DNA of 63,597 nt, counting the filler, from Octopus bimaculoides (lineage: Eukaryota): the NCBI RefSeq assembly GCF_001194135.2. It is 3 parts of 3 records of this genome, joined end to end, with 100 filler letters (N's around TTAATTAATTAA, not from the genome) between each part and the next. Parts side by side here need not be neighbours in the genome. Positions count along the whole stretch, not along the records: positions 1 to 29,453 come from NC_068999.1; 2 more parts are not named here. One strand, given 5' to 3'. The position numbers and the translations under genes were made by a program. Shown piece by piece: positions 1 through 25,776 of the stretch. Under the pieces are notes generated by a model that was not told where the DNA came from, made no database searches, and worked only from the letters and a program-made list of their open reading frames with translations. The first letter of the stretch is position 1. Each line of letters opens with the position of its first letter.

Positions 1-150
1 GTAGTAGTAGTAGTGGTGGTGGTGGTGGCGGCGGCAGTAGCAGTGGTGGTGGTAGTAGTAGTAGTGGTGGTGGTGGTAGCGGTGGTAGTGGTGGTGGTGG
101 TAGTAGTGCTGGTGGTGGTGGTAGTAGTAGTAGTAGTAGTTGTTGTTGTA
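1..150. repeat. (GTA/GTG)n trinucleotide microsatellite
   Basis: gtagtagtagtggtggt... visible directly. Confidence 0.95.
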
Positions 151-643
151 AAGAAAGCACAGGAAGGCAGAAAGTGAAGACAGATAAAAGGTGATAAAAA
201 AATTATATATAAAAATGGAACCTGAAGAAGAATGTTCACAATGACAAGGAAAATGTAGAAGAAAGAAAGAAGTTCAACAAGATAACATGAAACAAATAAA
301 TTTACATTATTGATGTAAGAAATCATAATGATCTAATGTGCAGCAGCATCAAATTATAGAATGTCATGCATGGCTAACTTTACAGAAATAGAAACTGAAA
401 CATATGATGCAAATCCAATTAAAATGTAAATTTGCATTAATACATTTTTATCATCTTTACAAAGTAAAACTGTTGCAAAAACCACGAAATAATCTGAAAA
501 TGAATTGAATATGAAACACACACACACACACGGGCAAATAACAAACCTGTCTAAATGATGATTAGATCTTTTAATAGATTAAACAGCAATAACAAGTATG
601 AAATGGTATCAGTATGCCAAAATAAACTTATAAAATAACATAC

Positions 644-718
644 CAGACTCCAAAATCTGTTCAAGGTGAAGTCTTTTGTTTTTACATTGATCAAGTGAGG
701 TTTGTAAAAATTTCTTTT
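644..718 (-). CDS. Internal exon (75 nt, phase 1-1) of unidentified minus-strand gene: (E)KKFLQTSLDQCKNKRLHLEQILES
   Basis: Acceptor ttgcttcttttcag|, donor CTG|gtatgt; open in the frame set by the 5389-5439 exon. Confidence 0.7.
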
Positions 719-1799
719 CTGAAAAGAAGCAATCAAAATCTCATTTTATTATTAACACTTGATAAATTTAATCTATAGAAACATAATTTTTATTTTNNNN
801 NNNNNNNNNNNNNNNNNNNNNNNNNNNNNNNNNNNNNNNNNNNNNNNNNNNNNNNNNNNNNNNNNNNNNNNNNNNNNNNNNNNNNNNNNNNNNNNNNNNN
901 NNNNNNNNNNNNNNNNNNNNNNNNNNNNNNNNNNNNNNNNNNNNNNNNNNNNNNNNNNNNNNNNNNNNNNNNNNNNNNNNNNNNNNNNNNNNNNNNNNNN
1001 NNNNNNNNNNNNNNNNNNNNNNNNNNNNNNNNNNNNNNNNNNNNNNNNNNNNNNNNNNNNNNNNNNNNNNNNNNAAAAAAAAAAAAATTTTTAAATAAAT
1101 AAATTCTTTTGAATTTGAAAATGTTTTCTTAAGGAATTAAATTCAAAGCAAACAAATTGAAAAATTGTATCTCATTTTCATTTCTGAAGTAAAGATAATG
1201 GATCAATATAGATTAAAAAAGAACAAAAAAAAGCAAAAAATCTTTGTTGTATTTTTTAAAATTCTTCCATCTAAAATATAAATCAATATTCATAAATGTT
1301 CTATAATTTAATTTTATTGTTCAATTAATTTCATTTGAACTTCTATTGTTACATTACACAGTTAGATTAGTGGAAAAATATTGTAAATAATTTCCAGTGT
1401 TAGCATTAGAATCTTTGAGAAAAGCCAACTTAGAGTCTACTTTTATTAACAACAATGACCAGAAAAATGATTTCAAGGGTTAAAGAAGAAAAAGAAATTC
1501 AATAAGGAAAGAAAAACAAAAATTGTAAGATTTTGTATTTTAAATCTTACTCTTAATTTTTAAAAATTGCATTCATTAAAACATGCTGCAAATTTTAAAA
1601 GAGTTCAATCCTGATTAGAAAGATTGCTTCACATTTACATGGTATAAAATTTGATTCACATTGCATGGCACCTTGAGCATGTTTTCTGCTGTAGTCTCAG
1701 GTTGACTTAAGCCTTGTCAGTGAAATTGGCTTGATAAAAGTTATATAGAAGCTTGTCTATGCTCTTGAGTAGTAGACTTAATATTTGTTAGTTGGTTTA

Positions 1800-2062
1800 A
1801 CTTTTAGTGTAATTTTGGTGGCCTGCACCAGCTATGTAAGTACCTCTGTAATTACTTCTATCCAAGGCATCCTCCTTGCCTTTGTAGCAGTTGACTGTAA
1901 TATATCACACTAGTTGCTGAATATGATACCTTCTTGGACCATCTGATGAGCAATGCAGGCAACAAGTTCATATCTCCTTCCTGAGATTTTAAGCCTCTCA
2001 GTGGTGATTCCTGGTGGACCAAGGGCTTTCCCTGTTTTCATATCTTTAATTGTTCTATCTAT
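1800..2062 (-). mobile_element. RTE-clade LINE reverse-transcriptase-region fragment (decayed)
   Basis: Minus translation KTGKALGPPGI and, after a frameshift, CYKGKEDALDRSNYRG, matching RTE GKAPG and YKGKGD..NYRG motifs. Confidence 0.8.
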
Positions 2063-2130
2063 CATACTGCTGTTGTAGTATAAAGTTAGAGCTTAACTTT
2101 CAACACAGCTTTGAATATTCTTATTTCAAC

Positions 2131-3058
2131 GGATCTATTTTAAAACGGGGGCGCCAGTTTTCATTTATGTTTTATGTAGTGTTTTTGGTACCGAAAGACT
2201 TTCAAACTTCGTATACTTATCTATTTTGTGTTATAGAACAGAAAAATATTTTTGTATTCGAATTTATTTCATGTAAAAAATTGTCTTATTTCGATAATTT
2301 CTACTAATCACTGATATCTATTCAGTTGAAAACAGTTAGTGCTGTAACGGTGTATATCGTATTAATCCCCTAACCCTAACCCTAACTAGACTGTTAACCG
2401 TAACTCTAACCCTATCCCTAAAACTAACCCTAACTCTAGAATCCGAACTCTAAAATTGTTACACACATAGATACNNNNNNNNNNNNNNNNNNNNNNNNNN
2501 NNNNNNNNNNNNNNNNNNNNNNNNNNNNNNNNNNNNNNNNNNNNNNNNNNNNNNNNNNNNNNNNNNNNNNNNNNNNNNNNNNNNNNNNNNNNNNNNNNNN
2601 NNNNNNNNNNNNNNNNNNNNNNNNNNNNNNNNNNNNNNNNNNNNNNNNNNNNNNNNNNNNNNNNNNNNNNNNNNNNNNNNNNNNNNNNNNNNNNNNNNNN
2701 NNNNNNNNNNNNNNNNNNNNNNNNNNNNNNNNNNNNNNNNNNNNNNNNNNNNNNNNNNNNNNNNNNNNNNNNNNNNNNNNNNNNNNNNNNNNNNNNNNNN
2801 NNNNNNNNNNNNNNNNNNNNNNNNNNNNNNNNNNNNNNNNNNNNNNNNNNNNNNNNNNNNNNNNNGTCAGTGATTGGTTGAAATTACAGAAATACAACAA
2901 CTTTAACATGGAATAACTTGCGAATTCCTTTTTTTTGTTAAGAAGACTAAGAGTAAAAGATGTTTTATATGACACATTCTACCAGTGTCCCAAGTTTCAA
3001 AGTGTTTCGTTAGTGTTTCGTTAAGAAAATACTGGCGCCCCCGTTTTAAAATAGATCC
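2131..3058. mobile_element. Non-autonomous DNA transposon (MITE) with 28-bp perfect TIR, longer imperfect sub-TIRs and 8-bp TSD; Merlin- or hAT-like
   Basis: GGATCTATTTTAAAACGGGGGCGCCAGT at 2131-2158 and its reverse complement at 3031-3058; ATTTCAAC at 2123-2130 and 3059-3066. Confidence 0.9.
2367..2440. repeat. Degenerate (CCCTAA)n telomere-type repeat inside the MITE
   Basis: ccctaaccctaaccctaac...ctctaaccctatccctaaaactaaccctaac. Confidence 0.8.
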
Positions 3059-4379
3059 ATTTCAACTACCAGAAACAAGCTATATTTCATGTTTTCATGA
3101 TAATAGAGAAAACCAACTGCAAATATATATGACTACAAAAGATTGGCCTGTTTACTACTCTCTTTAGCTAACCATGAAAAAAATGATACATGCTTTTGCC
3201 TTAATATAAGAACAATCTTATATAGTATAAACATTACAAATAATCGACTGCCATATCTTGCTGGTACTTATTTTAGCAATTTTAGAATGATGAATGATAC
3301 AGTCTTTAATAAGAAAATTTCAAATTATGTTGAGCAGAGCAAACTATGTTTGAGTAATATCTTCAAACCTAACATACTAATCAGTCATGGTGTATGATTT
3401 ATCTTATAAATTGTCCTCAACTTTATATAAGATTTTCTGTGAAGATTTTATTACTATATAACTGCAATATTCCAAGTGGTACAATATAGAAATAGCCATT
3501 TGTATGGGATACTTCTAAAAGAAATGAATTAATATGATGCATAAATAAATATTCATAAAAGGAAATAGTATTAAAAAAATTGAAGATGGATTGCTCTCAA
3601 GAAAATTCAGTAGACGAAAGACCAGAATACTATTTAAAAATTATAGGAAGTAATTAAAATAAACATAAGACAGAAGATTAATCTTCATACTTGAAGCTTA
3701 CAGAGCCATTACAATGGAAAATATACCAAATTTTCAAAATGAAATATTAGCATTAGTATTTAACTAGTAGAATAAACAAAAATTAAACAAAAAGAAAGAA
3801 AAAAACAGATTAGCAATATTAATAAACTGGTTTTAAATGGCTTTTGATTTCTTTGAAATGACAAAAATGTTTAATCTAAATTCAAAATATGTAACTACAT
3901 TATTTAATCTCTCTGTGACGGAATTTTTGATCTACATCTCAAAACAATGACTGAATATATAATCAAGTGATAATAAAGATGTTTCTACTCCATTTGGTAC
4001 CTTATTGACTATGTTGAAGCTGAAACATTGAATTCTGTAGCCTCTTGTTTCTGCTGCATCAGTGCTTATGATACTCTAAAGTTGACCAAAATACATATTC
4101 TTTTTAATCCTTGAGCCATGTAATATATATTGGAAAGATCTTTACACTAATAGATATCCACCTAATTAATTCATACACTGCATAGTGCCTTTAAATTTCA
4201 ACAATTTTCAACGAAGATAAAGAATTCTAAATAAGAAAGCATATTCAATGTTTCAGGAATAAGGATTGAAAGCTTGAAGTGAGCAATCAGGAAATTTGAT
4301 TCTCTTCAGATGATGAGGCGATGACAAGTGATTGAGACCTTTTGTCAATTTCCTGTGCTTGACAAGACACCTCTAGTCA

Positions 4380-4597
4380 TGGCCAGTACTAGTGACAGTA
4401 AAAGACTCCCGTGCTAGTGACACATAAAAGGCACTCACTATATTCTGTGGAGTGGTTGGTATTAGGAAGGGCATCCAACTCAAGAGACCAATCCAAAACA
4501 GACTGAAGCCTGATGCAGCTCTCTGGCTTACCAGTTCCAGTCAAAATGTCTAATCCATACCAACATGGAAAACAGACACTAAATGATGATGATGACA
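4380..4597 (+). mobile_element. SINE family D, old copy with (GAT)n tail
   Basis: gagtggttggtattaggaagggcatcca...catggaaaacagacactaaatgatgatgatg; homologous to 25618 and 61433 copies. Confidence 0.8.
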
Positions 4598-5048
4598 ATG
4601 ATCAAATTTGCACTACAGTTTGAGAACTGGAGGAGATTTTATGCGTACATATATGAGTGTGTATGCATGGTTGTGTCTCCTTATCTTCACATTGCATGAT
4701 AGTTGCAAATGAGTGACTGTCACAGAAATAGGGTGTCTTATTTCCAGTCTTCTCTAAAAACATTTCACTGTATCTTATCTATTGTATGTATGTATGTATG
4801 TATGTATATGCCTCTTTCTCACATGCTTACATACACCCTTCCCACAAGCATAAATGCTGCAGTGCTTTGAATGGAGACAAGGTAAAATCTGCATTCAAAT
4901 TAAAAGATTTCCTCCAATCGACTTCAAGAAGCTTAATTAATGATCATGTATATAATTATGGTGATTATATGAATTTTATATATAGAAAAACTATTTTATT
5001 GAGATATAATGAAAATTTAAGTTAAGACTCTAAATTTAATGCCGGAGC

Positions 5049-5176
5049 ATCATCATCATCATCATCATCATCGTCGTTTAACGTCCGCTTTCCATGCTAG
5101 CATGGGTTGGACGATTTGACTGAGGACTGGTGAAACCGGATGGCAACACCAGGCTCCAGTCTAATTTGGCAGAGTT
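5049..5176 (-). mobile_element. SINE family D, 5'-truncated young copy
   Basis: catcatcgtcgtttaacgtccgctttccatgctagcatgggttggacg, near-identical to 61433 copy. Confidence 0.9.
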
Positions 5177-5388
5177 TTAGACTGTGCTTATAATTTAAAG
5201 TCTGAGTGGCAAGCCATTAAAAAACTATTGTTTCTTTTATGATATATTCCACCAACCAGTTAAAGGCATCTAATGAGATTCTTTAGAGAAACCATAGATT
5301 AGATTGTAAAAATGGATAGTGACCTATGAGTAATAACATACAGCAAAAGATTAAACCATTTTTAGTTTTGAAAAATATTTAGCCTTAC

Positions 5389-5439
5389 CATAAAGTAATT
5401 CACATACATTTATAAATGGAATTCCATATGAATACCATT
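5389..5439 (-). CDS. Internal exon (51 nt, phase 1-1): (E)WYSYGIPFINVCELLY
   Basis: Acceptor ctaacctctcctctctag| with branch-like ctaac, donor TATG|gtaagg; only this frame is stop-free. Confidence 0.8.
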
Positions 5440-5599
5440 CTAGAGAGGAGAGGTTAGTATTCTAGCAGCAATGAATTAACAAACTACTGCCATATCAAAT
5501 ATGAGCTGTATCATCATAACCATGATAGTCATCATCATCTAAGCAGGTCAAATACCATGAATTGCCACCTCTGTCTTTTTTGGAATACCCTTATATACA

Positions 5600-6230
5600 T
5601 TCACAGCATTTCTGTCAGTCTGACTCTTGATATTCTTCCATATAATCCCTGGTTTTAGCCTTTCTTCCTATTCATTTTACTTTTTATTAACAGTTGCTGC
5701 AAACCTTTTTTTTTTTCTAATTAAGTGTCCAAAATATTTTTGGTTTTTCTTTTTGATGGTGTCTCATAAAATTTTCTTAATTTTCATCCTTTTCAGTTCT
5801 TTATCATTGGTTTTGAGTTCTGTGCATGAAAATCTCAAGTCTTGCATATGCTCACATCTCAAAGACTTACTTGATAGCACTTTCATTAATATCCATGTTT
5901 TAGATCTATATCATAGACTTGACCATTTTAATAATCTTTTTCTGATTTAACTATAAATGTCTTTTTTTTTATATTATTATAAATATATGACTATTTTTGG
6001 AAGGAATTTTTATGCCCTTTGATGCCTGCTTCATATTTCCTGCTTTCTACTTGCATATATCCTGCATATATCAACTTTTGTGTCTGCTCATTTAGATTAC
6101 CCACCAGTTTTTTTTTTTGTTTTTTTTTCTTGCTGATTACCATTGAACCTGTTTACGTTGCATTCATGCTAATCATGCTGATCTATGTGACCAAAATTAA
6201 AATTTTACATATCTAGCTCTGGTACACAAA
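5600..6230 (-). mobile_element. Decayed RTE-like LINE ORF2 C-terminal fragment
   Basis: Minus tttgagatgtga...atttcatgcacagaactcaaaaccaatgataaagaactgaaaagg resembles the FEMW..RI.W.E.KTNEEVL motif; many lesions. Confidence 0.5.
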
Positions 6231-6323
6231 AGCTTTAGTGGATTTGCTTTTCAACTCTGTCATTTCAAAGTTGATTAGATGGACTATATTTTTACAAAAA
6301 GAGTATAGTCAAATTCTTCTTAC

Positions 6324-6368
6324 CTCTGTCACTAAACATTGGCTTATTGATTTCATTGACAACAATAT
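6324..6368 (-). CDS. Internal exon (45 nt, phase 1-1): (D)IVVNEINKPMFSDR
   Basis: Acceptor taattaacag|, donor AGAG|gtaaga; in frame with both neighbours. Confidence 0.75.
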
Positions 6369-7224
6369 CTGTTAATTATACCTATGTACATTCATTGACT
6401 GTAGTTTGCTTTTTAGTGAGGTTTTTTTTTATATATAGTTTAGTCAAGAAAGTAAGCGTTGTGCTGATTAAATCTTTCTCAAGGCTCTCAAAACTGATGG
6501 AAAGAAGAGAGGAAGATATCTTTAAACCAGAGACAATGGTTTCTTTTTCATATTTTCAATATAAGAGTATGGAAAAGATACAGCAGAGTGAGAGGTGCTT
6601 CAACTCTTCAACTAACTCATGAAACAGCATCATTATAGAGATTTTCTTAACTAGCAAAGGTTTCATTTTATTTTTCAGTTAATTACCTTCTTGTGTCACA
6701 GCTAACTAGTTTCACAAAGTATTTGCTTTCAAACTGATAAATCAATAGTTTATATTTCATTATCTCCACTGCTCATTAGTCGATGGCAAAGAACTTGACT
6801 GTCAAATCACTAAATAAAAGTATCCATTCTTTAAAGGTAGCATTGCTTACAACTTCGATCGCTAAACAATTTGAGTTTACAGATTGCATAAAAATGTTAT
6901 TCTGTTATCCTTTTACTGGTTTAAATTTTGGACTGCAGCCATGTTGGGGCACCATTTTCAAGGGTTTTTAATCTATTATGTCAAACACAGTTCTTATTCT
7001 AGTACTCACTTGACTGATTGTGCTCGTATTGCAGGCTACTATAGCCTAGGCTGACTGATGTCTTGAGTGAAAAATTGGAAACTGTTGTTCTATGTTTATG
7101 CCCTATTACTTAGCAGTTTAATACAGAAATCAATAAAATCACAAGACAAAATTAACTGCTAAGGTCAAAATGATTAACTGAAACTTATCAAGCTGGTGCC
7201 ACACTATAGGTGTAGTCTGGGAGT

Positions 7225-7415
7225 GTGCAGGAAAAAATGCTTAGCAGCATTTCTTCTAGATCTTCATGTTCTAAGTTCAAATCCCACCAAGGTCAACATT
7301 GCCTTTCATCCTTTCTGACTTGATAAAATAAAGTACCAGTCATGTATTGGGATCGATGTAATTGATTAAACCCTCCCCTCAAAAATGGTAGCCTTGTGCC
7401 AAAATAGGAAACGGT
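7225..7415 (+). mobile_element. SINE family A, old CpG-decayed copy
   Basis: atgcttagcagcatttc...gttcaaatcccaccaaggtcaacattgcctttcatcc...gccttgtgccaaaat. Confidence 0.8.
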
Positions 7416-7677
7416 TACTAAAACAAGAATAAAAGAATAAATCAGGGTTTTATGCGACTTGACCCTGCTTCTTTTTAATTTAAATATACAAAGAAAAGGT
7501 TTTATAGAAATACAATGTAAATAAATAATCTTTCTTGTTAATTAGAAATTAGAAACAATATTCATAAATAAAGTAACATAAAATTTATTTACTTTTTTAA
7601 TGAAAACAAAATTAAAGTGAGAGAAAAAAAAAGCAACAAAGACATTTTCTTCAGAATTTGTCTTTGAATTATCTTAC

Positions 7678-7718
7678 CATTCTGTAGTTCATTTAAAGTA
7701 TCATCGAGTGCTTCCAGT
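7678..7718 (-). CDS. Internal exon (41 nt, phase 2-1): (L)LEALDDTLNELQN
   Basis: Acceptor ggatttcag|, donor AATG|gtaaga; heptad-like peptide; in frame with neighbours. Confidence 0.8.
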
Positions 7719-7914
7719 CTGAAATCCCCACAGGAAAAAGTCATAATGTTCAGGTATCTTTAACAAAAAGAAGAAAAACAAAGTTATTTCTGTGATAGCA
7801 ACAGTTGATATAATGCTAATTATTAATGATGGCATTGATGACACCATCACCACCACTATGACCACCATTACCACCACCATATTAACAACAACAACAACAA
7901 TAATGTTTTCTGCT

Positions 7915-8125
7915 ATAGGCATAAAGCTAGAAATTTTTGGTGGATGGGGGAGGGGCTAGGTGATTACATCAATCCCAGTGCATAACTGGTACTTATCTCA
8001 TTGACTCTGAAAAGATGAAAGGCAAAGTCAACCTCAGTGGAATTTGAACTCAGAATATAAAGAAGTACAAGATGCTGCTAAGCTCTGTGTCCAGTGTGCT
8101 AATGAATTTGCCAGCTCACTACCTT
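7915..8125 (-). mobile_element. SINE family A, old copy
   Basis: gatgaaaggcaaagtcaacctcagtggaatttgaactcagaa...gccagctcactacc. Confidence 0.8.
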
Positions 8126-8169
8126 AATAGTAATAATAATAATAATAACAATTGCTGGTAATTACAAAA

Positions 8170-8345
8170 TATGCTTAGGGGCGTTTTTTTCTGGCTCTTT
8201 ACATTCTGGATTCAAATTCTGCCAAGACCAACTCTACCTTCATCTTTTCAGGGTTGATAAAATAAACACTAGTCAAACACTAAGGGCTGATGCAATCAAT
8301 TGACTTACTCCCTTAAAATTGTTAGCCTTGTACTTATAGCAGAAA
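8170..8345 (+). mobile_element. SINE family A, old copy
   Basis: ggattcaaattctgccaagaccaact...gggttgataaaataa...gccttgtac. Confidence 0.65.
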
Positions 8346-8374
8346 GAATTATTATTATAATTATTGTTGAAGAT

Positions 8375-8581
8375 AGTATTTATTATTAATTCTTAAATTA
8401 TTATATTCTGAGAGCAAATCTTGCTAAATCTTACTTTACATTTAGTATTTATTATTAATTCTTAAATTATTATATTCTGAGAGCAAATCTTGCTAAATCT
8501 AACTTTACATTTAGTATTTATTATTAATTCTTAAATTATTATATTCTGAGAGCAAATCTTGCTAAATCTTACTTTACATTT
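8375..8581. repeat. 69-bp minisatellite, 3 near-perfect copies
   Basis: Units start at 8375, 8444, 8513 (agtatttattattaattcttaaatt...ctttacattt). Confidence 0.95.
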
Positions 8582-8776
8582 AATTATTTCAGTGTCAGTA
8601 AAATGAGTGCCTGTTAAATGTTGGAGTTGACAATATCAACTACATTCTTCTCCACAGTGATAGTTTTGTACCATTCATAAAAATAGTATCAGATAGATAT
8701 ATCTAATCTACAGTATTCAAGTATTTCCTCTAAGTGTCAGATCCTATAGAACCTTTGGGTTAGCAGATTCATTTAC

Positions 8777-8808
8777 AGCTTTTTCTGATTCATTATTGCA
8801 CTATTTGC
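8777..8808 (-). CDS. Internal exon (32 nt, phase 0-2): ANSAIMNQKK(L)
   Basis: Acceptor aacatttcag|, donor AGCT|gtaaat; the other two frames have stops; CT+A gives Leu with the next exon. Confidence 0.7.
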
Positions 8809-8900
8809 CTGAAATGTTATAACTGATATTTTTCAAAGTTACCTGTCCAAATCAAGACAATTATCATGCCATCACTTACATTCTGAGCTAGTCATTTTAC

Positions 8901-8929
8901 ATCCTGCTCCATGATCACCATTATTTTTT
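8901..8929 (-). CDS. Exon (29 nt, phase 1-0): KIMVIMEQD
   Basis: Acceptor catttatgtatcag|, donor GAT|gtaaaa; 92-nt intron to next exon; the internal ATG could instead be the start codon. Confidence 0.55.
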
Positions 8930-10539
8930 CTGATACATAAATGATTACTTTTTTATTTTTTCCTTTTTCTCTCTGTCTTTCTTCTCTTTGTTTTCTATCA
9001 CATAACTTTGTAAATGAATAATCTGGTATTTATTTTAATGGCCTACTGTAACATTATTTTAATGTTACAGTGCGTTTGTGCCCTAGGTGTCAGGAAGACA
9101 CTCAGCCAGAAATGGAAACAAAATTGAAAGAAAATGATAATGAAAATAATAATGATAATAATAATAATCCATTCATGTATTTATTTATTTATTTATTTTT
9201 TTAAATACATATTTTACCTGTGAATTTGCATGTGTAAACTGGGAATGCATACAATGAGCTTCTCTGCCATAGGTGTACGGAAAACACTCAGCGAGAAATG
9301 GAAGAAAATTTGAAGAAAGAAGAAAAACAACAACAACAATAATAATAATAGTTGTTGTTGTTGTTACCATGCCAGCATAGAAGGTCAACATTAAACGATG
9401 ATGATGATGATGATGGTGTTGCTGTGGTTTGTTGAGTTTTTGTCATCATGAAAATAATGACTACATATTTTCAACAAAAATCAAAAGTAGTGAAATATCA
9501 CTCCTGGAAATGTAGAATATGCTAACATTTCTACATTGCCATTTGTTAGTTTAGTGATGTTCAAATTTCCATAAACTGTATTAGGCTATTAGAATATTTA
9601 AAAGAGATAGGTGAATTTTGATTTGCAATTTGCAATTTGCACTAAGCATCAAATTTTCTTTAGATTAGCATATAGGATTTAAAATACCTTGGGACACAAC
9701 TTACATTAATAAAACACATCTGTATATGACTTCAAATGATTAACATGAAAAGTTTATAAAGTAGGAGCAACTGAGACACAATAAAAAAAAGTCAGCAAAA
9801 TATTCATTCAGTATTTACCCAATAAAAACAAGTGAGTATCCAAATAATTGAGGGAGTAAGGTATGTAGGTCTCTCAGTTCATATATACTGAATTGTGAAG
9901 GCAACATAGTGTAGGCAATCCTCTGAATTCTTTCTATGTTGTTGTTTAGCACTAGACCAGCTCTCTGATTAACAACAACTGCAATCAAAGACATTCCAGC
10001 TGTAGCCATCCTATCTTTTTACAAAACTAGAACTACATTGTTTAATAGATCTTGGTTTTTTAAAAACAAGTTCCAATGTTTTGAGTTCTTCAGAATAAAG
10101 ACAACAAAATTTTCGCATCCTCTGTGTTTGAGAAACATACTGCTACTGTCTTTTTGTTTAAGTTCACTGGAACAAGTAGAATTAGAAGCATTGCTCAAGG
10201 GTACAATACCTATGTAATATTAACATAATTACAGCAGTGGACTGGCAAAACATGTAGTGTGGCGAATAAATATAATTTGAAAATTATTTCATGCCCATCA
10301 AGATAGATTGAGTTTTTATCCCTCTAAGTGAGATTCAATCCAAGAAAACAATATTATGGCATTTATATTTAGCAACTTGGTTGTGCAAGAAGTAAACTTA
10401 TTGAAATCCATTTTCAAGAATTGCTTGTGATTTTCAGTAGGAACCATTTCACTTTATTTATGTCACTAATTTCAAATAAAGCATAAATATCAAAACTTCT
10501 CTTCTCTTCTAAAATATATAATATTTAAGCTGAGTTAAA

Positions 10540-11543: not shown

Positions 11544-11917
11544 GCAATGGCCCAGTGGTTAGGGCAGCGGATTTGCGGTCATAAGATCGCGGTTTCGATT
11601 CCCAGACCGGGCGTTGTGAGTGTTTATTGAGCGAAAACACCTAAAGCTCCACGAGGCTCCGGCAGGGGATGGTGGCGAACCCTGCTGTACTCTTCCACAG
11701 GCGGCGAGCTGGCAGAAACGTTAGCACACAGGGCGAAATGCTTAGCTGTATTTCAAATGCCGCTACGTTCTGAGTTCAAATTCCGCCGAGATCGACTTTG
11801 CCTTTCATCCTTTCGGGGTCGATTAAATAAGTACCAGTTACGCACGGGGTCGATATAATCGACTTAATCCGTGTTTGTCCCCTCTGTGTGTAGCCCCTTG
11901 TGGGTAGTAAAGAAATA
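11544..11917 (+). mobile_element. Chimeric SINE: family B tRNA-like head fused to a full family A SINE, 17-bp TSD
   Basis: TSD ACACTTGCTTAAGATGC at 11527-11543 and 11918-11934; A box tggcccagtggt, B box ggtttcgattccc; junction ctcttccaca|ggcggcgagctggcag at 11700/11701. Confidence 0.9.
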
Positions 11918-13497: not shown

Positions 13498-13697
13498 ATG
13501 GCAAGATGGCAGAATTGTTAGCACACCTGGCAAAATGCTTAGCAGCACTTCATCCTTCCTTACAAATTCCACCGAGGTTGACATTGCCTTTCATTCTTTT
13601 CAGGGGTCGATAAAATAAGTACCAATTGAATACTGGAGTCGGTGTAATTAATTTACACCCCGCCCCACCACACTTGCTGGCCCTGTGCCAAAATTTT
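13498..13697 (+). mobile_element. SINE family A, old copy
   Basis: atggcagaattgttagcacacc...ggggtcgataaaataagtacc...ggccctgtgccaaaattt. Confidence 0.85.
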
Positions 13698-16280: not shown

Positions 16281-17745
16281 CATGAATTTCTCTTTAACAC
16301 TAGCATTTGCATATTTAAGATATAAAATCAAAATACATCCATTTAAATCAAAGAATATTTTAAAATCTCTGATGGTACATATAGATGTATGTATGTACAT
16401 GTAAAATAAGTATATTCATGTATGAGTATGAGTTGATGTGTGACTAAATGTTTTTGTATAACTATATACAAAAAANNNNNNNNNNNNNNNNNNNNNNNNN
16501 NNNNNNNNNNNNNNNNNNNNNNNNNNNNNNNNNNNNNNNNNNNNNNNNNNNNNNNNNNNNNNNNNNNNNNNNNNNNNNNNNNNNNNNNNNNNNNNNNNNN
16601 NNNNNNNNNNNNNNNNNNNNNNNNNNNNNNNNNNNNNNNNNNNNNNNNNNNNNNNNNNNNNNNNNNNNNNNNNNNNNNNNNNNNNNNNNNNNNNNNNNNN
16701 NNNNNNNNNNNNNNNNNNNNNNNNNNNNNNNNNNNNNNNNNNNNNNNNNNNNNNNNNNNNNNNNNNNNNNNNNNNNNNNNNNNNNNNNNNNNNNNNNNNN
16801 NNNNNNNNNNNNNNNNNNNNNNNNNNNNNNNNNNNNNNNNNNNNNNNNNNNNNNNNNNNNNNNNNNNNNNNNNNNNNNNNNNNNNNNNNNNNNNNNNNNN
16901 NNNNNNNNNNNNNNNNNNNNNNNNNNNNNNNNNNNNNNNNNNNNNNNNNNNNNTTTTCATTGAAGAACAGTATGCTGAAATAAATAATAAATAACATTTT
17001 AATAAAAAGTAAATTTAAAGTAAGTTCCCCAAAATGTATTTTGACTGAAACATTAAATGCTATGGTCTTTTGTGTTATGTTATAGTAATAAATACATAAA
17101 TAATAATTTCAATTGAACTGTAAATAAGTGAAATACATAGAATATAAAACTTAAAGTCTAACTCTATAAATTTAACATAATACTGCTTTAGATTTCAAAT
17201 TATGTTTGGGACATAATATTTTACCTTTATATTAGATACATAAGTTGTTTACAGTGAAAGAAGTTGGAAACTAGGCATTGCTCTCCTTTAGCTGTTGAAA
17301 AATTAGTGTACAAAAAGAAATTGGAATTATGAAATTTTACAAAATAAGATGTTCAAGAAATATGTGTTGATGATAACCTGTCCAAATGAGAAACCAAGAA
17401 ATGACATACTTTCAGTCAGTGAACACAGTGATCAATATGAAATGAACAGTCATTGAGAGCATGTTCAAAATAAAAGGACATTTTAAAATTGGATAAAGTA
17501 AGGTTATTAAAAAATAATTGGATAATTATTTCATCAAATAGGGGCCAAAAAAATAACAAAACTGGTAGGAACAGACACAGATACAAAATTATATGATGTG
17601 ACTTTTATAATACAGAGTATATTTTAAATAAAAAGAGATCACTAATCTCTCTAGTGGTTGCCTTGTTCTCTAAGATAACAATGAGTTTAACAATGTGCAG
17701 AGTTGTAGCAATGAAACTATGCCAATAATGTCACATCTTGCTTTA

Positions 17746-18124
17746 TATAGGGTCATTCCATAAAATATGCAATTTTTTTATACTACATTTATTTTTCAAA
17801 ATTAAGTTCATTTTTTTTTTAAATCTAAAATATACTTTTTCATTTTCTACAATGCTCTTCCATCTATCTTGTAGACTTGCAAGGGCCCTCTTACAAAATT
17901 CACTTGTCCATGAGGAAAAATATTCCTCCAGTATTGGTCTGACCTTGTCTACAGAATTCATATTTTTTCTGTCCAAATGATTTCGAAGATTGCGGAATAA
18001 ATGATAATCAGATGGGGCAATGTCGGGTTAATATGGTGGGTGAGGCATTGTTTCCTATTCAAACTGCTCCAGCGTTTGGAATGTCATCCTCTCTGTATGT
18101 GGCTGAGCATTATCCTGATGGAAC
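17746..18124 (-). mobile_element. mariner 3' fragment with terminal inverted repeat
   Basis: Minus: HQDNA...HPPY*PDIAPSDY...LASLQDRWKSIVENEK, ending ...atggaatgacccta+TA. Confidence 0.9.
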
Positions 18125-18290
18125 TCATAAAGCTAAATATGTCGAATATGTTCCTTTGTCACTTTTATTATAGCTTTGAAAGAATAACTGTTAAAGTCGA
18201 ACTGCACTCTTCAAAACTTGTGCTAAGAGTAAGTACAAGGTAAAATTACTACCTGCTTTTATAGCAAGATGATGCAAATAGTTTTCAATA

Positions 18291-19195
18291 ATGGAAGTGA
18301 GAAAGAAGCCTATTTGGCATATTTTGATTTATGAGTTCAATAAAGGCAACAACACAATGGAAAGTGTGAGGAATATTAATGCAGTATATGGGGATCAGAC
18401 AATAAGTGTAAGCCAGTGTCAATGGTGGTTCCAGAAATTCTGAGCCAGAAACTACAGCCTAGAAGACAAACTTTGTTCTGGAAGATCTATAGAGCTCGAC
18501 AAGGATGCCCTGCAAACCCTGGTGGAACAAAATCCAATCGTAACTGCTGAGGAACTAGCAGAGTAGCTTGAATTTGGTCATTCAACCATTCATCAACATC
18601 TGCATGCCATCAGAAAAGGCAGCAAATTGGGTCAATGGGTTCCTCACAAACTTTCCAAGTCTAATTGCATGCAGAGAGTGAATATGTGCTCTTCTTTGCT
18701 GCCATGTCTCACAAATGAGCCTTTTTTGAACTAAATAGTGACTGGTGATGAGAAATAGGTTCTCTATTAAAATGCCAAATGCTGAAAACAGTGGATAGGG
18801 AAAGGAGAAACACCAGCACCCCAGGCTAAAGAACATCTTCACCCACGTAAGGTGTTGTTATCTGTTTGGTGGGATATAAAAGGTTTAGTCCACTTTGAAC
18901 TTTTAAACCCAAACTAAACGATAACAGAGGAGATCTACTGCGAGCAGCTTGAGTCAGTGCTAGAAGGAAAACAACCATCTTTGGTTTCATGACAAAGGGT
19001 GTTCTTTCATCAGGATAATGCTTGGCCACATATAGTGAGGATGACATTCCAAAGGCTTGAGCAGTTTGAATGGAAAATGATACCCCACCCACCATATTAA
19101 CCAGACATTGCCCCATCTGATTACCATTTATTCTACAGTCTTCAAAATCATTTGGACAGGAAAATATAAATTCTGTAGACAAGGTCAGAACAGTA
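18291..19195 (+). pseudogene. mariner (DD34D) transposase pseudogene, multiple stops, truncated near the C-terminus
   Basis: MEVRKKPIWHILIYEF..., WVPHKL, IVTGDEK, HQDNA, Y*PDIAPSDY; 34 residues counted between second and third Asp. Confidence 0.95.
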
Positions 19196-19719
19196 CATCC
19201 ATAGATACAAGCATATGTATAAAAATGCATGCATGTATATATGTATGTATGTGTGTAACTAAGTATATGTATACATGCAAATATATGTAGGGAAGAGGGG
19301 GTCTTGTTGATAATTAACCCTGCTTTCATCAACAAACTTATGAGTAAAGGTATCCTAGCCATGCCATCTGGTTTTATTTATTTAGCTTTTGAAGCTGGAT
19401 ATGAAGAGATACATCATCTATTTTTAAGACAGTAGGAGGTAATTTGATGGTGGTTTGGCTGATATTATTAGCAAATAGAATAACCATATAGTGGCTTCAA
19501 TTATTGACACACTGTATAAATCGGTGCCCTTGTGCCACAAATAAGATATTATTATTTCAAAGCTTTACAGCCATGTAAATACCAGCATGAAATTGAATAT
19601 ATTTGAGAAAAAAAGAAACAAACAGATCCAAAAACATTTGATTAGCTGATATAGAAACTGTTATTGCTTAATTATAATTTTTTCCCTCTTTTCTGTTCGA
19701 TAATTTATTCAGAACTTAC

Positions 19720-21987: not shown

Positions 21988-22130
21988 TTGCAAGTCTACC
22001 AGATAGATGGAAGAACATTGTATAAAATGAAGGACAGTATATTTTAGATTAAGAAAGAACTTTGTCTATCTTAATTTTGAAAAATAAAAGAAGTATAAAA
22101 AAACTACATTATTTATGGGATGACCCAATA
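21988..22130 (+). mobile_element. mariner 3' end with TIR, same family as 17746-18124
   Basis: ttgcaagtctaccagatagatggaagaacattgt (ASLPDRWKNIV)...ttatgggatgacccaa+TA. Confidence 0.85.
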
Positions 22131-22179
22131 CACACACACACATATGCTTGTTATTGTTTGTCTATGGACATATATGTCG

Positions 22180-22537
22180 TTAGGGCAGCGAACTAGCGAT
22201 CATAGGATCGTGGTTTCGATTCCCAGACCGGGCGTTGTGAGTGTTTATTGAGCGAAAACACCTAAAGCTCCACGAGGCTCCGACAGGGGGTGGTGGCGAA
22301 CATTGCTGTACTCTTCCACAGGCGGCGAGCTGGCAGAAACGTTAGCACACCGGGCGAAATGCTTAGCCATATTTCAACTTTCTCTCACTCTTACTTCCTG
22401 TTTCTGCTGTGCCTGTAATTCAAAGAGTCAGCCTTGTCACACTGTGTCATGCTGAATATCCCCAAGAACTACGTTAAGGGTACACATGTCTGTGGAGTGC
22501 TCAGCCACTTGCACGTTAATTTTACGAGCAGGCTGTT
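22180..22537 (+). mobile_element. SINE family B carrying an internal ~55-bp family A 5' segment; runs into a gap
   Basis: ctcttccaca[ggcggcgagctggcagaaacgttagcacaccgggcgaaatgcttagccatatttc]aactttctctcactc... Confidence 0.85.
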
Positions 22538-23877
22538 NNNNNNNNNNNNNNNNNNNNNNNNNNNNNNNNNNNNNNNNNNNNNNNNNNNNNNNNNNNNNNN
22601 NNNNNNNNNNNNNNNNNNNNNNNNNNNNNNNNNNNNNNNNNNNNNNNNNNNNNNNNNNNNNNNNNNNNNNNNNNNNNNNNNNNNNNNNNNNNNNNNNNNN
22701 NNNNNNNNNNNNNNNNNNNNNNNNNNNNNNNNNNNNNNNNNNNNNNNNNNNNNNNNNNNNNNNNNNNNNNNNNNNNNNNNNNNNNNNNNNNNNNNNNNNN
22801 NNNNNNNNNNNNNNNNNNNNNNNNNNNNNNNNNNNNNNNNNNNNNNNNNNNNNNNNNNNNNNNNNNNNNNNNNNNNNNNNNNNNNNNNNNNNNNNNNNNN
22901 NNNNNNNNNNNNNNNNNNNNNNNNNNNNNNNNNNNNNNNNNNNNNNNNNNNNNNNNNNNNNNNNNNNNNNNNNNNNNNNNNNNNNNNNNNNNNNNNNNNN
23001 NNNNNNNNNNNNNNNNNNNNNNNNNNNNNNNNNNNNNNNNNNNNNNNNNNNNNNNNNNNNNNNNNNNNNNNNNNNNNNNNNNNNNNNNNNNNNNNNNNNN
23101 NNNNNNNNNNNNNNNNNNNNNNNNNNNNNNNNNNNNNNNNNNNNNNNNNNNNNNNNNNNNNNNNNNNNNNNNNNNNNNNNNNNNNNNNNNNNNNNNNNNN
23201 NNNNNNNNNNNGATAAATATACATATACATCAAACCACACACACAATCATCACAACTGTCTCACAAATCTATATTACATATGACCATACATACACTCTCA
23301 TAAATAACTTTATAGAATCATTTTCTGATCAATAGATGTAGGTGATTTAGATAAGAGACATCATGATAGAGGCAGTGTGTTGATGATCTGTAGAAAACAG
23401 AAAATGGTTTGTTGACAGTTTAACAACAGCAGTTTGATAATTATTCAAGATACATTGCTCAAAGATTATTATTTTAATTTGTGAAGAACATTTAGTAGAT
23501 ACCAATCAGTTTTGTGCCTAGAAGTGAAAATATCAACCAGTATAATTTATGCCAGATTGAAGCTATTCTTGAGGAATAACTTGATAGTTTAAAAGATAAG
23601 TCCATTCAGAAGAAAAGCAGATATATTTCTATGTCTGCATAGGTATATGTAATTCAGTGTTGTATCATGCATGTATATTATGTGTGCATGTGTCTCTACC
23701 TATATGATCATACACACACATACATAGTATATATTTGTGTATGTGTGCGTGTAAGTGTATGTGTGTGTATGTATGTATAAATGTGTGTGTGCATATAAGT
23801 ATGTATATATGTGAACGCATATGTGTGTTGTGTTTGTGTACATGCATGTGTTGTGTATGTGTGTGTGTATATACATC

Positions 23878-24045
23878 ATGATGATGATGATGATCATCAT
23901 CATCGTTTAACATCCGTTTTCCATGCTGGCATGGGTTGGATTGTTTGACTGAGGTCTGGAGAGCCAGGAGGCTGCACCAGGCTCCAATCTGATCTGGCAA
24001 TGTTTCTACAGCTGGATGCCCTTCCTAATGCGAACCACTCCAACA
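23878..24045 (-). mobile_element. SINE family D
   Basis: catcgtttaacatccgttttccatgctggcatggg...ggatgcccttcctaatgcgaaccactc. Confidence 0.9.
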
Positions 24046-24336: not shown

Positions 24337-25617
24337 CTACAGATAAATAAAGAGGTTGTTAATCCTCAGCTAGGCAATATTACAGACTTACAATCCTATG
24401 CATTCTCTGTTCGTTTTACAGTGTCTGCCAGGTGCATTTGTCATGGCACCAGCACTAAAGATGTCTCAATCATCAATCATTCTAGACAGTGTGTGAGGAG
24501 GGACTTTTCTACAATAGCACCAGCTCAGGGGTCATGTGTCTTGTACACAGTAAATGTAAAAAGTACTCAGTAACCTCAGATGTATTCTTCTGATCAGGTG
24601 AGTTTGGAGGGAAATAGGAGAGAAAGCAATGACATCATAAAGGCCAGAATGGATTAACAAAAGGGGGCAAGTGTGTTGGTGTAGGTTATATTTAGTAAAT
24701 TTAGACATATTTTGTTCAGGTGACCAATGAGGGAAATAAGAGAAAGAGGGCAATGGCACCCTCTTATACTATGGCATTCTTTCATCTCAGCTCCTATCAA
24801 TGAAAGACTGCAATTATACCGGTTTCACACATGTATATGCAATCTGATACCAAATCATGCACGAGCTCATTTAACGCTACCAATACACATGAAGTTGACA
24901 CACACAAAGTCAGACTGCACACTCTGCACACAAGCAACACTGCATGCAATTCAAACTTACTTGGATATGCACCTGTATACTTGTTGTCTTGTATATGTCA
25001 CCTCAGATTCCCTCTTCTGATACCTATGATCTTTCTGACCTTGCATCACATCCATCTGTATCTTATACACTTTAGATTCATCATTCACAATTCAAAACAT
25101 TGTTCAATTTTCACATAATGCACATTTCTCTAAGTTTTCCTGGAACCATTCATTTTTGAAAATTCACGAAAGCAGGGAGTGATGAAGCAGATTATTATAT
25201 GGACTCTTAGCCAGGAATTGAAACCTTAGTCTAGATTTTTCTGTGAGCTCCTTTCCATTGTTCTTGGCATTACCACTTAGCAGTTTATAAGAGTCAACTG
25301 TCATACTTAGATAAGTCTTATCATTTCACTTAACATCTTAGGTTAAATTTAGTTCAACTGAAATAAACACACTCTCTTCTTTTGCTCTCAAGACTTCCTT
25401 CTAATTTCCAATGTGTCTTCTACTATAGTTCAGGCCAACCAAAGGTGTACGAATAAACTTGCTGAGAATGAAAACAAAGCAGTCCATATATGGAACCTGA
25501 TGCAACTCTGATCAAACCATCCAACTCATACCAGCATGGAAAACAGATGTTAAAGGATGATGATAATGATGATGACATACATACACACACACACACATGC
25601 ATATATATATATATTCT

Positions 25618-25776
25618 GAGTGGTTGGCGTTAAGAAGGGCATCCAGCTGTAGAAACTCTGCCAAATTTAGATTGAAGCCTGGTGTTGCCATCCGGTTTCA
25701 CCAGTCCTCAGTCAAGTCGTCCAACCCATGCTAGCATGGAAAGCGGACGTTAAACGATGATGATGATGATGATGAT
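25618..25776 (+). mobile_element. SINE family D, young copy; an older tail lies at about 25495-25575
   Basis: gagtggttggcgttaagaagggcatccagc...ggaaagcggacgttaaacgatgatgat. Confidence 0.9.

What the first reader, a model, noticed from the sequence alone, without database searches (positions are those of the whole stretch)
644..8929. Hidden minus-strand gene made of six very short exons, spliced in one frame
Seen: exons 8901-8929 (29 nt), 8777-8808 (32), 7678-7718 (41), 6324-6368 (45), 5389-5439 (51) and 644-718 (75). All have AG/GT ends, and their phases (1-0, 0-2, 2-1, 1-1, 1-1, 1-1) interlock into KIMVIMEQDANSAIMNQKKLLEALDDTLNELQNDIVVNEINKPMFSDREWYSYGIPFINVCELLYEKKFLQTSLDQCKNKRLHLEQILES without a stop. 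Alternative frames are mostly closed. The peptide has heptad-like acidic helices flanking an aromatic WYSYGIPF motif. I do not recognise the family. None of it appears in the ORF track, and ab initio predictors often miss such exons.
Basis: partly seen in the sequence, partly recalled or inferred. Interest (0 to 1): 0.72.

Follow-up and report, generated by a model that had tools for sequence, protein, structure and literature searches.

The report
Two real exons, four chance ones
Two of the six proposed mini-exons belong to an octopus gene that RefSeq already annotates (a coiled-coil protein faintly like the meiotic protein SYCE1), while the other four look like chance matches, so the proposed 90-residue peptide is probably not a real product.

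Summary
All have AG/GT ends and splice in silico to the quoted stop-free peptide. That property carries no weight: the same 8.4 kb allows about 1e13 stop-free six-exon chains, and the opposite strand about as many.

An exhaustive HMMER search with the open stretch around exon 6 found XP_052830870.1, 'uncharacterized protein LOC106867251 isoform X4 [Octopus bimaculoides]'. In that protein, window 7757-7678 is joined directly to 718-644.

- Exon 6 is a real annotated exon with both ends correct.
- Exon 3 has the correct donor, but its acceptor at 7718 lies inside the annotated 80-nt exon.
- Exons 4 and 5 sit in the annotated 6,959-nt intron, which also holds both assembly gaps. Adding them lowers the protein's only family match, SYCE1, from 23.1 to 16-17 bits.
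- Exons 1 and 2 have mediocre splice sites and are absent from X4.

I could not retrieve isoforms X1-X3, so alternative use of the four extra segments is not excluded. The gene is already annotated. The only small gain is a sub-threshold SYCE1-like assignment.

The parts
7678..7757 (-). Annotated 80-nt coding exon of LOC106867251 isoform X4. It encodes (R)YLNIMTFSCGDFRLEALDDTLNELQN. The acceptor is ttaaag|A at 7758/7757 and the donor is ATG|gtaaga at 7678.
   Evidence: tblastn of P0121 places residues 19-47 on 7759-7673. The sequence was read directly. The in-silico splice reproduces P0121 residues 20-70. Site scores are acc 4.4 and don 4.1. GC is 0.38 against 0.26 in the flanks.
644..718 (-). 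It encodes (E)KKFLQTSLDQCKNKRLHLEQILES. The acceptor is ttttcag|A and the donor is CTG|gtatgt.
   Evidence: The HMMER hit was found with window:612-740:-. tblastn places residues 45-70 on 722-645. The junction residues E (G|AA) and V (G|TN) in P0121 fit both ends. Site scores are acc 5.8 and don 3.7.
719..7677 (-).
5389..5439 (-). It has very good splice-like sites and a TACTAAC-like branch site, is 51 nt long and is in phase. It is absent from X4 and poorer in GC than its flanks.
   Evidence: acc 4.8 and don 5.5. It is not in P0121. Its inclusion lowers the SYCE1 score from 21.7 to 17.4 bits. GC is 0.24 against 0.33 in the flanks. About one such decoy is expected in an intron of this size, my estimate from the density.
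6324..6368 (-). It has a strong donor but only a median acceptor.
   Evidence: acc -8.4 (top 49% of AG sites) and don 6.2. It is not in P0121. Its inclusion lowers the SYCE1 score to 16.0 bits. It shows no GC contrast, 0.31 against 0.31.
8777..8808 (-). It would have to splice into 7718, which lies inside the annotated exon.
   Evidence: acc -2.2 and don -2.4, in the top 15% and 27% of sites. It is not in P0121. It adds nothing to the SYCE1 match.
8901..8929 (-). It does contain an ATG in a fair context (aataATGg).
   Evidence: acc -6.0 and don -2.6, in the top 34% and 30% of sites. It is not in P0121. It adds nothing to the SYCE1 match.

Best explanation
The region is part of an already annotated Octopus bimaculoides gene, LOC106867251, on the minus strand. 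Two short coding exons lie in it: 7757-7678 (80 nt) and 718-644 (75 nt). In isoform X4 they are spliced directly to each other across a roughly 7-kb, repeat-rich, AT-rich intron. The first coding exon of X4 and all exons after 644 lie outside the window.

Two of them are these exons. Those four are most likely pseudo-exons.

The protein is a coiled-coil protein. Its N-terminal 120 residues align collinearly, but below Pfam's threshold, with SYCE1, the synaptonemal complex central element protein 1. If it is the orthologue, it would act in meiosis as a central-element component that stabilises synapsis.

Shown here: the exon coordinates, the direct junction, and the identity with the RefSeq protein. 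Inferred: the pseudo-exon status of the other four segments, the SYCE1 relationship and the function.
For: - An exhaustive HMMER search of window:612-740:- gave a single hit, P0121 (E=9.7e-7). P0121 is XP_052830870.1, LOC106867251 isoform X4 of O. bimaculoides.
- tblastn places P0121 residues 19-47 on 7759-7673 and residues 45-70 on 722-645. Nothing else in the window matches credibly.
- Splicing 7757-7678 to 718-644 in silico reproduces P0121 residues 20-70 exactly.
- The acceptor at 7758/7757 follows a long pyrimidine tract.
- The two confirmed exons are richer in GC than their flanks (0.38 vs 0.26 and 0.31 vs 0.25). Exon 5 is poorer (0.24 vs 0.33) and exon 4 is equal.
- Chance gives about 1e13 stop-free six-exon chains here.
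- SYCE1 (PF15233) scores 23.1 bits, E=8.3e-5, over residues 4-121 against profile positions 24-143 of 152, straight through the 7678/718 junction. Adding exons 1-2 gives 21.7 bits, exon 4 gives 16.0, exon 5 gives 17.4 and both give 16.3.
- None of 71 composition-, register- or block-preserving decoys hit SYCE1, and only one had any Pfam hit at E<=1e-3.
- SYCE1 is reported to arise in Bilateria (Fraune et al., as cited in PMC4132317).
Against: - Only isoform X4 was seen. It is not on record as the gene's longest product, so a longer isoform exists that I could not retrieve. It might contain some of the four extra segments or use the 7718 acceptor, which is 39 nt from 7757 and therefore in frame.
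- XP_ records are computational models, and I could not inspect any transcript evidence.
- Segment 5389-5439 has better splice-site scores than the two confirmed exons and is in phase.
- The SYCE1 match is below Pfam's gathering score (23.1 vs 27 bits).
- BLASTP against human SYCE1, typed from my memory and not verified, is not significant (E=0.15).
Confidence: 0.78

Rival explanations
1. Some of the four extra segments are genuine alternative exons of LOC106867251. Candidates are 5389-5439 as a 51-nt in-frame cassette, or exons 1-2 as an alternative 5' end joined to an alternative acceptor at 7718. They would be used in isoforms I could not see.
For: - 5389-5439 has the best site scores in the region (acc 4.8, don 5.5) and a TACTAAC-like branch site. 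Its only open frame is the phase-compatible one.
- X4 is not the longest product of the gene.
- 7718 and 7757 are 39 nt apart, so both acceptors keep the frame.
- Exon 1 carries an ATG in a fair context.
Against: - None of the four is in X4.
- Ten guessed isoforms built from X4 plus or minus these segments are not in the 15-billion-protein collection. This is weak evidence, because it assumes the X4 C-terminus.
- Each insertion lowers the SYCE1 score by 4-6 bits, and exons 1-2 add nothing.
- Exon 5 is poorer in GC than its flanks, unlike the confirmed exons.
- About one decoy of this quality is expected per 7 kb of strand (my estimate).
- Exons 1, 2 and 4 have at least one mediocre splice site.
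Confidence: 0.15
2. The reader's full six-exon model is a real transcript that encodes the 90-residue peptide as written.
For: The chain is stop-free with canonical dinucleotides. Two of its exons are real.
Against: - It needs all four unsupported segments at once, plus an acceptor inside an annotated exon.
- The chain-level statistics are at chance level.
- The Erf4 Pfam match of the peptide (E=0.046) is at noise level. Among 149 decoys there were 20 family matches at E<=0.05, two of them genuine mariner fragments. The peptide has no similarity to GOLGA7.
- The insertion breaks the SYCE1-like alignment.
Confidence: 0.03
3. There is no real gene here: the RefSeq model is itself a prediction artefact and all the segments are chance.
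For: - XP_ records are model proteins.
- The N- and C-terminal tails of X4 look non-native (MVFGGRRTEVLLLLHYG......CYKDNINYMVLLSMKIFF...).
- There are no Pfam hits in the three minus-strand frames of 1-9498.
Against: - The two exons have top-percentile splice sites on both sides and GC contrast with their flanks.
- The spliced product continues into about 170 residues of coiled coil with a collinear SYCE1 match that decoys do not reproduce.
- From my general knowledge of NCBI's pipeline, multiple numbered isoforms normally rest on transcript alignments.
Confidence: 0.04

Closest known systems
RefSeq gene LOC106867251, protein XP_052830870.1 (uncharacterized protein, isoform X4, Octopus bimaculoides)
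   Same: Window 7757-7678 and 718-644 encode residues 19/20-70 of this protein exactly, on the same strand and in the same order.
   Different: The rest of the protein (residues 1-18 and 71-244) lies outside the window.
SYCE1, synaptonemal complex central element protein 1 (Pfam PF15233)
   Same: The protein is a coiled coil. It aligns collinearly over about 120 residues, covering profile positions 24-143 of 152, at E=8.3e-5, and decoys do not reproduce this. SYCE1 is reported to be present from Bilateria on (PMC4132317).
   Different: The score of 23.1 bits is below the gathering score of 27. Pairwise similarity to human SYCE1 is not significant. No expression or interaction data are available.
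Pseudo-exons in long introns (intronic segments with good splice-like sites that are not spliced; my general knowledge)
   Same: Segments 5389-5439 and 6324-6368 lie in a 7-kb intron, have splice-like ends and are open in frame, yet are absent from the annotated product.
   Different: Their non-use has been shown for one isoform only.
Micro-exon genes (MEGs) of Schistosoma
   Different: Here only two short exons (80 and 75 nt) are confirmed. The 80-nt exon is not a multiple of three. No signal peptide is seen, and the protein is an intracellular-type coiled coil.

Membership tests
   The feature does not discriminate: about 1e13 such chains exist on this strand and about 3e12 on the other.
   Only 644-718 and the 3' part of 7678-7757 are in XP_052830870.1, and they are joined directly. 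Guessed isoforms containing the other segments are not in the collection.
   Exons 1 and 2 are in the top 15-34% of sites only, and the acceptor of exon 4 is in the top 49%.
LOC106867251 (RefSeq gene) | The window encodes part of the protein exactly, with splice sites at the junctions | tested here: met
SYCE1 (PF15233) | Score at or above Pfam's gathering threshold (27 bits) | tested here: not met
   21.3 bits for X4 and 23.1 bits for the core without the odd termini.
SYCE1 (PF15233) | A collinear match over most of the domain that is not reproduced by coiled-coil decoys | tested here: met
   Residues 4-121 align with profile positions 24-143 of 152. None of the 71 decoys (the reversed sequence, 40 heptad-register shuffles, 30 heptad-block shuffles) hit SYCE1.
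SYCE1 (PF15233) | Meiotic (gonad) expression and binding to central-element partners | not testable with these tools
   No expression or interaction data are available.
Erf4 / GOLGA7 (PF10256) | Pfam gathering score (29.3 bits) and similarity to family members | tested here: not met
   14.1 bits, E=0.046. Among 149 decoys there were 20 family matches at E<=0.05. BLASTP against human GOLGA7 found nothing. A profile of 120 vertebrate GOLGA7 sequences scored -1.1 bits.
Micro-exon gene (Schistosoma MEG type) | Most of the coding region is made of symmetric micro-exons, and the product is secreted | tested here: not met
   Only two short exons are confirmed, and one of them (80 nt) is not symmetric. 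No signal peptide is evident in P0121. The definition comes from bioRxiv 10.1101/2023.06.21.545858.

The most novel reading that the evidence does not exclude
One or more of the four extra segments is a genuine but unannotated alternative exon of the SYCE1-like gene. The best candidate is the 51-nt in-frame segment 5389-5439, which would insert an aromatic, helix-breaking stretch (EWYSYGIPFINVCELLY) into the conserved N-terminal coiled coil. That would give a regulated variant of a cephalopod synaptonemal-complex protein.
Probability: 0.1. Interest if true: 0.25.

Novelty: already known. Interest (0 to 1): 0.15.

Why it matters
It matters little biologically. The gene is already in RefSeq, and the proposed six-exon peptide is most likely wrong. 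There are two modest take-aways.

1. The 'uncharacterized' LOC106867251 may be the octopus SYCE1 homologue. That is a cheap lead for cephalopod meiosis, testable by gonad expression.

2. There are two methodological lessons. In AT-rich, intron-rich genomes, chaining AG..GT open segments always succeeds, so interlocking phases are not evidence. Only the per-site splice quality pointed to the real exons. Separately, the word-indexed protein search missed an exact 25- and 26-residue match that the exhaustive HMMER search found. I would have wrongly dismissed the whole finding without that last search.

Tried and rejected
- **Word-indexed protein search.** I searched with the 90-residue peptide and with 2,545 residues of concatenated open segments from 300-9100. 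Both found nothing, although the matching protein is in the collection. These were false negatives of the tool, and I had at first read them as evidence against any gene.
- **Erf4/GOLGA7 lead.** The Pfam match was E=0.046. I spent one protein search on human GOLGA7. BLASTP, a local profile and 149 decoys showed the match to be noise.
- **Other database searches on the window.** The PDB sequence search with the peptide found nothing. Pfam on the three minus-strand frames of 1-9498 found nothing; my attempts to pass DNA references failed because of stop codons. Rfam and tRNA scans found nothing.
- **Contig look-ups.** The look-up of encoding contigs on two window ORFs and on P0121 found nothing on record.
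- **N-terminus of X4.** I searched the window for MVFGGRRTEVLLLLHYG and did not find it.
- **Guessed isoforms.** I looked up ten guessed isoforms by exact sequence, and none exists in the collection.
- **Comparison with human SYCE1.** The PDB holds no SYCE1 against which to verify the human sequence I recalled. BLASTP to that recalled sequence was not significant.


Full report
**1. The observation.**
I extracted the six minus-strand segments (8901-8929, 8777-8808, 7678-7718, 6324-6368, 5389-5439, 644-718). Each is preceded by AG and followed by GT. The description is therefore literally correct. Both assembly gaps (797-1074, 2475-2865) fall in what would be the last intron, so no reading frame crosses a gap. 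Exon 6, however, sits on a 796-bp piece that is joined to the rest only by scaffolding.

**2. Is the chain more than chance?**
The window is about 31% G+C, with 0.074 stops per codon.

- In 600-9000 there are 934 AG..GT segments of 25-80 nt with an open frame on the minus strand and 738 on the plus strand.
- They can be chained into about 1.1e13 and 3.0e12 stop-free six-exon paths. With stricter site rules there are still 48,132 versus 45,223.
- The claim that 'alternative frames are mostly closed' (9 of 12) matches the expectation of 7.9.
That is no better than the best chain in block-shuffled sequence, 12.3 +/- 7.1.
- The best chain on this strand (42.5) keeps 7678-, 5389- and 644- but uses three quite different partners.

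The chain as such carries no information. What does stand out is site quality at three segments: 7678-7718, 5389-5439 and 644-718 have both sites in the top 1-6% of all AG/GT sites in the window. Exons 1 and 2 are mediocre, and exon 4 has only a median acceptor.

**3. Homology: first a false negative, then the answer.**
- The word-indexed search of 5.8 billion proteins found nothing for the peptide.
- It also found nothing for 2,545 residues of concatenated open segments from both strands of 300-9100.
- The PDB sequence search gave nothing.
- Pfam gave only Erf4/GOLGA7 at E=0.046. I showed this to be noise. There was no BLASTP similarity to human GOLGA7. A profile of 120 GOLGA7 sequences scored -1.1 bits. 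Among 149 decoy peptides there were 20 Pfam family matches at E<=0.05, two of them genuine mariner fragments.
- Pfam on the three minus-strand frames of 1-9498 was empty, and so were Rfam and the tRNA scan.

At that point I would have called the finding an artefact. The one exhaustive HMMER job I was allowed went to the 43-residue open stretch around exon 6 (window:612-740:-). It returned a single hit, P0121 (E=9.7e-7). This is XP_052830870.1, 'uncharacterized protein LOC106867251 isoform X4 [Octopus bimaculoides]', 244 aa. The protein is in the collection that the word-indexed tool searches. Searches were therefore false negatives of that tool.

**4. What the annotated protein shows.**
- tblastn places residues 19-47 on 7759-7673 and residues 45-70 on 722-645. 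Nothing else in the window matches credibly.
- The sequence shows an acceptor ...ctttgtttttcttctttttgttaaag|A at 7758/7757 and the donor ATG|gtaaga at 7678.
- Splicing 7757-7678 to 718-644 in silico gives YLNIMTFSCGDFRLEALDDTLNELQNEKKFLQTSLDQCKNKRLHLEQILES, which is P0121 residues 20-70.

- Exon 6 is a real annotated exon with both ends correct.
- Exon 3 has the right donor, but its acceptor (7718) lies inside the annotated 80-nt exon.
- Exons 4 and 5 lie in the annotated 6,959-nt intron (719-7677), which also contains both gaps.
- Exons 1 and 2 are upstream and absent from this isoform.

The direct 7678>718 junction also supports the order and orientation of the scaffold pieces across the two gaps. 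The first 18 residues of X4 and everything after ...ILES are not encoded in the window.

**5. The four other segments.**
- The two confirmed exons are richer in G+C than their flanks (0.38 vs 0.26 and 0.31 vs 0.25). Exon 5 is poorer (0.24 vs 0.33), and exon 4 (0.31 vs 0.31) and exon 2 (0.31 vs 0.30) barely differ from theirs. Exon 1 is slightly richer (0.34 vs 0.29).
- From the density of equally well-flanked open segments elsewhere in the window, I estimate that about one such decoy is expected in a 7-kb intron. A single open frame has a one-in-three chance of being in phase.
- Adding the segments to the real protein does not help its only family match (section 6). Exons 1-2 change it from 23.1 to 21.7 bits. 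Exon 4 lowers it to 16.0, exon 5 to 17.4, and both together to 16.3.
- Ten guessed isoforms (X4 with or without these segments, and with alternative starts) are not in the 15-billion-protein collection. This is weak evidence, because it assumes the X4 C-terminus.

One caveat remains. X4 is not on record as the gene's longest product, so a longer isoform exists that I could not retrieve. In addition, 7718 and 7757 are 39 nt apart, so an alternative acceptor at 7718 would keep the frame.

My estimates that each is used as a real exon:

| Segment | Probability |
|---|---|
| 5389-5439 | about 10% |
| each of the other three | about 5% |
| the full six-exon peptide | about 3% |

**6. What the gene is.**
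P0121 is a coiled-coil protein. Its best Pfam match is SYCE1 (PF15233) at 21.3 bits for X4. For the core without the odd termini the score is 23.1 bits, E=8.3e-5. The match covers residues 4-121 against profile positions 24-143 of 152 and runs straight through the 7678/718 junction. This is below the gathering score of 27. However, none of 71 decoys (the reversed sequence, 40 heptad-register-preserving shuffles, 30 heptad-block shuffles) hit SYCE1, and only one had any Pfam hit at E<=1e-3.

SYCE1 is reported to appear in Bilateria (Fraune et al., as cited in PMC4132317), so a mollusc orthologue is plausible. BLASTP to human SYCE1, typed from my memory and not verifiable in the PDB, is not significant (E=0.15).

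I put the SYCE1 relationship at about 50%. If it is true, the protein would be a central-element component of the synaptonemal complex acting in meiotic synapsis. That function is inferred, not shown.

**7. Comparison with known things, and verdict.**
The closest known object is the RefSeq gene itself. The defining features are not met here. The four extra segments fit the well-known class of intronic pseudo-exons (my general knowledge).

The finding is partly right, because a real minus-strand gene with short exons is there and two of the six exons were found. But the gene is already annotated, the proposed peptide is most likely not a product, and the argument used (interlocking phases) has no force. 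Novelty: already known. Interest: low.

Noticed in passing
tools:: The word-indexed protein search reported no candidate for queries that contain exact 25- and 26-residue stretches of XP_052830870.1. That protein is in its own collection. The exhaustive HMMER search found it. Negative results from the indexed search on short eukaryotic exon queries are therefore unreliable.
   Followed up: yes
window 2368-2438: A degenerate telomere-like repeat, (CCCTAA)n with about 12 copies and 69% matches, directly abuts the assembly gap at 2475-2865, inside the gene's intron.
   Followed up: no
window 2128-2161 (+) and 3028-3061 (-): A 34-bp inverted repeat (ggatctattttaaaacgggggcgccagt..., 94% identity) flanks the same gap. 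It could be the terminal inverted repeats of a small DNA transposon, or a palindromic region that broke the assembly.
   Followed up: no
window 1913-2092 (-): An open stretch with a LINE reverse-transcriptase-like motif (DMKTGKALGPPGITTERLK) lies in the intron. It is not significant in Pfam.
   Followed up: partly
window 7232-7405, 7947-8117, 8166-8368, 11555-11870, 13500-13694, 22176-22377; second family 4439-4604, 5048-5177, 23854-24042, 25512-25776: There are two families of short dispersed repeats (SINE-like, 70-96% identity, in both orientations). Several copies lie in the introns of the gene. They gave no tRNA or Rfam match.
   Followed up: partly
   Followed up: no
window 17743-19362: A decayed mariner-type transposon. 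Transposase pieces lie in several frames at 18282-18914 (+), and two decoy peptides containing them hit HTH_48 and Transposase_1. It is flanked by inverted 193-bp copies at 17931-18123 and 19005-19196, with a related piece at 21988-22130.
   Followed up: partly
window 7733-7735 (-), inside exon 7678-7757: An in-frame ATG (aacattATGact, M24 of X4) could be the start codon of isoforms whose upstream exons are untranslated. It would give MTFSCGDFRLEALDD.... One guessed protein with this start and the X4 C-terminus is not in the collection.
   Followed up: partly
window, minus versus plus strand: By my matrix, strong donor-like sites are about twice as frequent on the minus strand (32) as on the plus strand (14), while acceptor-like sites are equal (93 vs 89). 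The cause is unknown; it may be compositional.
   Followed up: no
the six proposed exons: Their lengths rise monotonically along the gene (29, 32, 41, 45, 51, 75 nt). I found no meaning in this.
   Followed up: no
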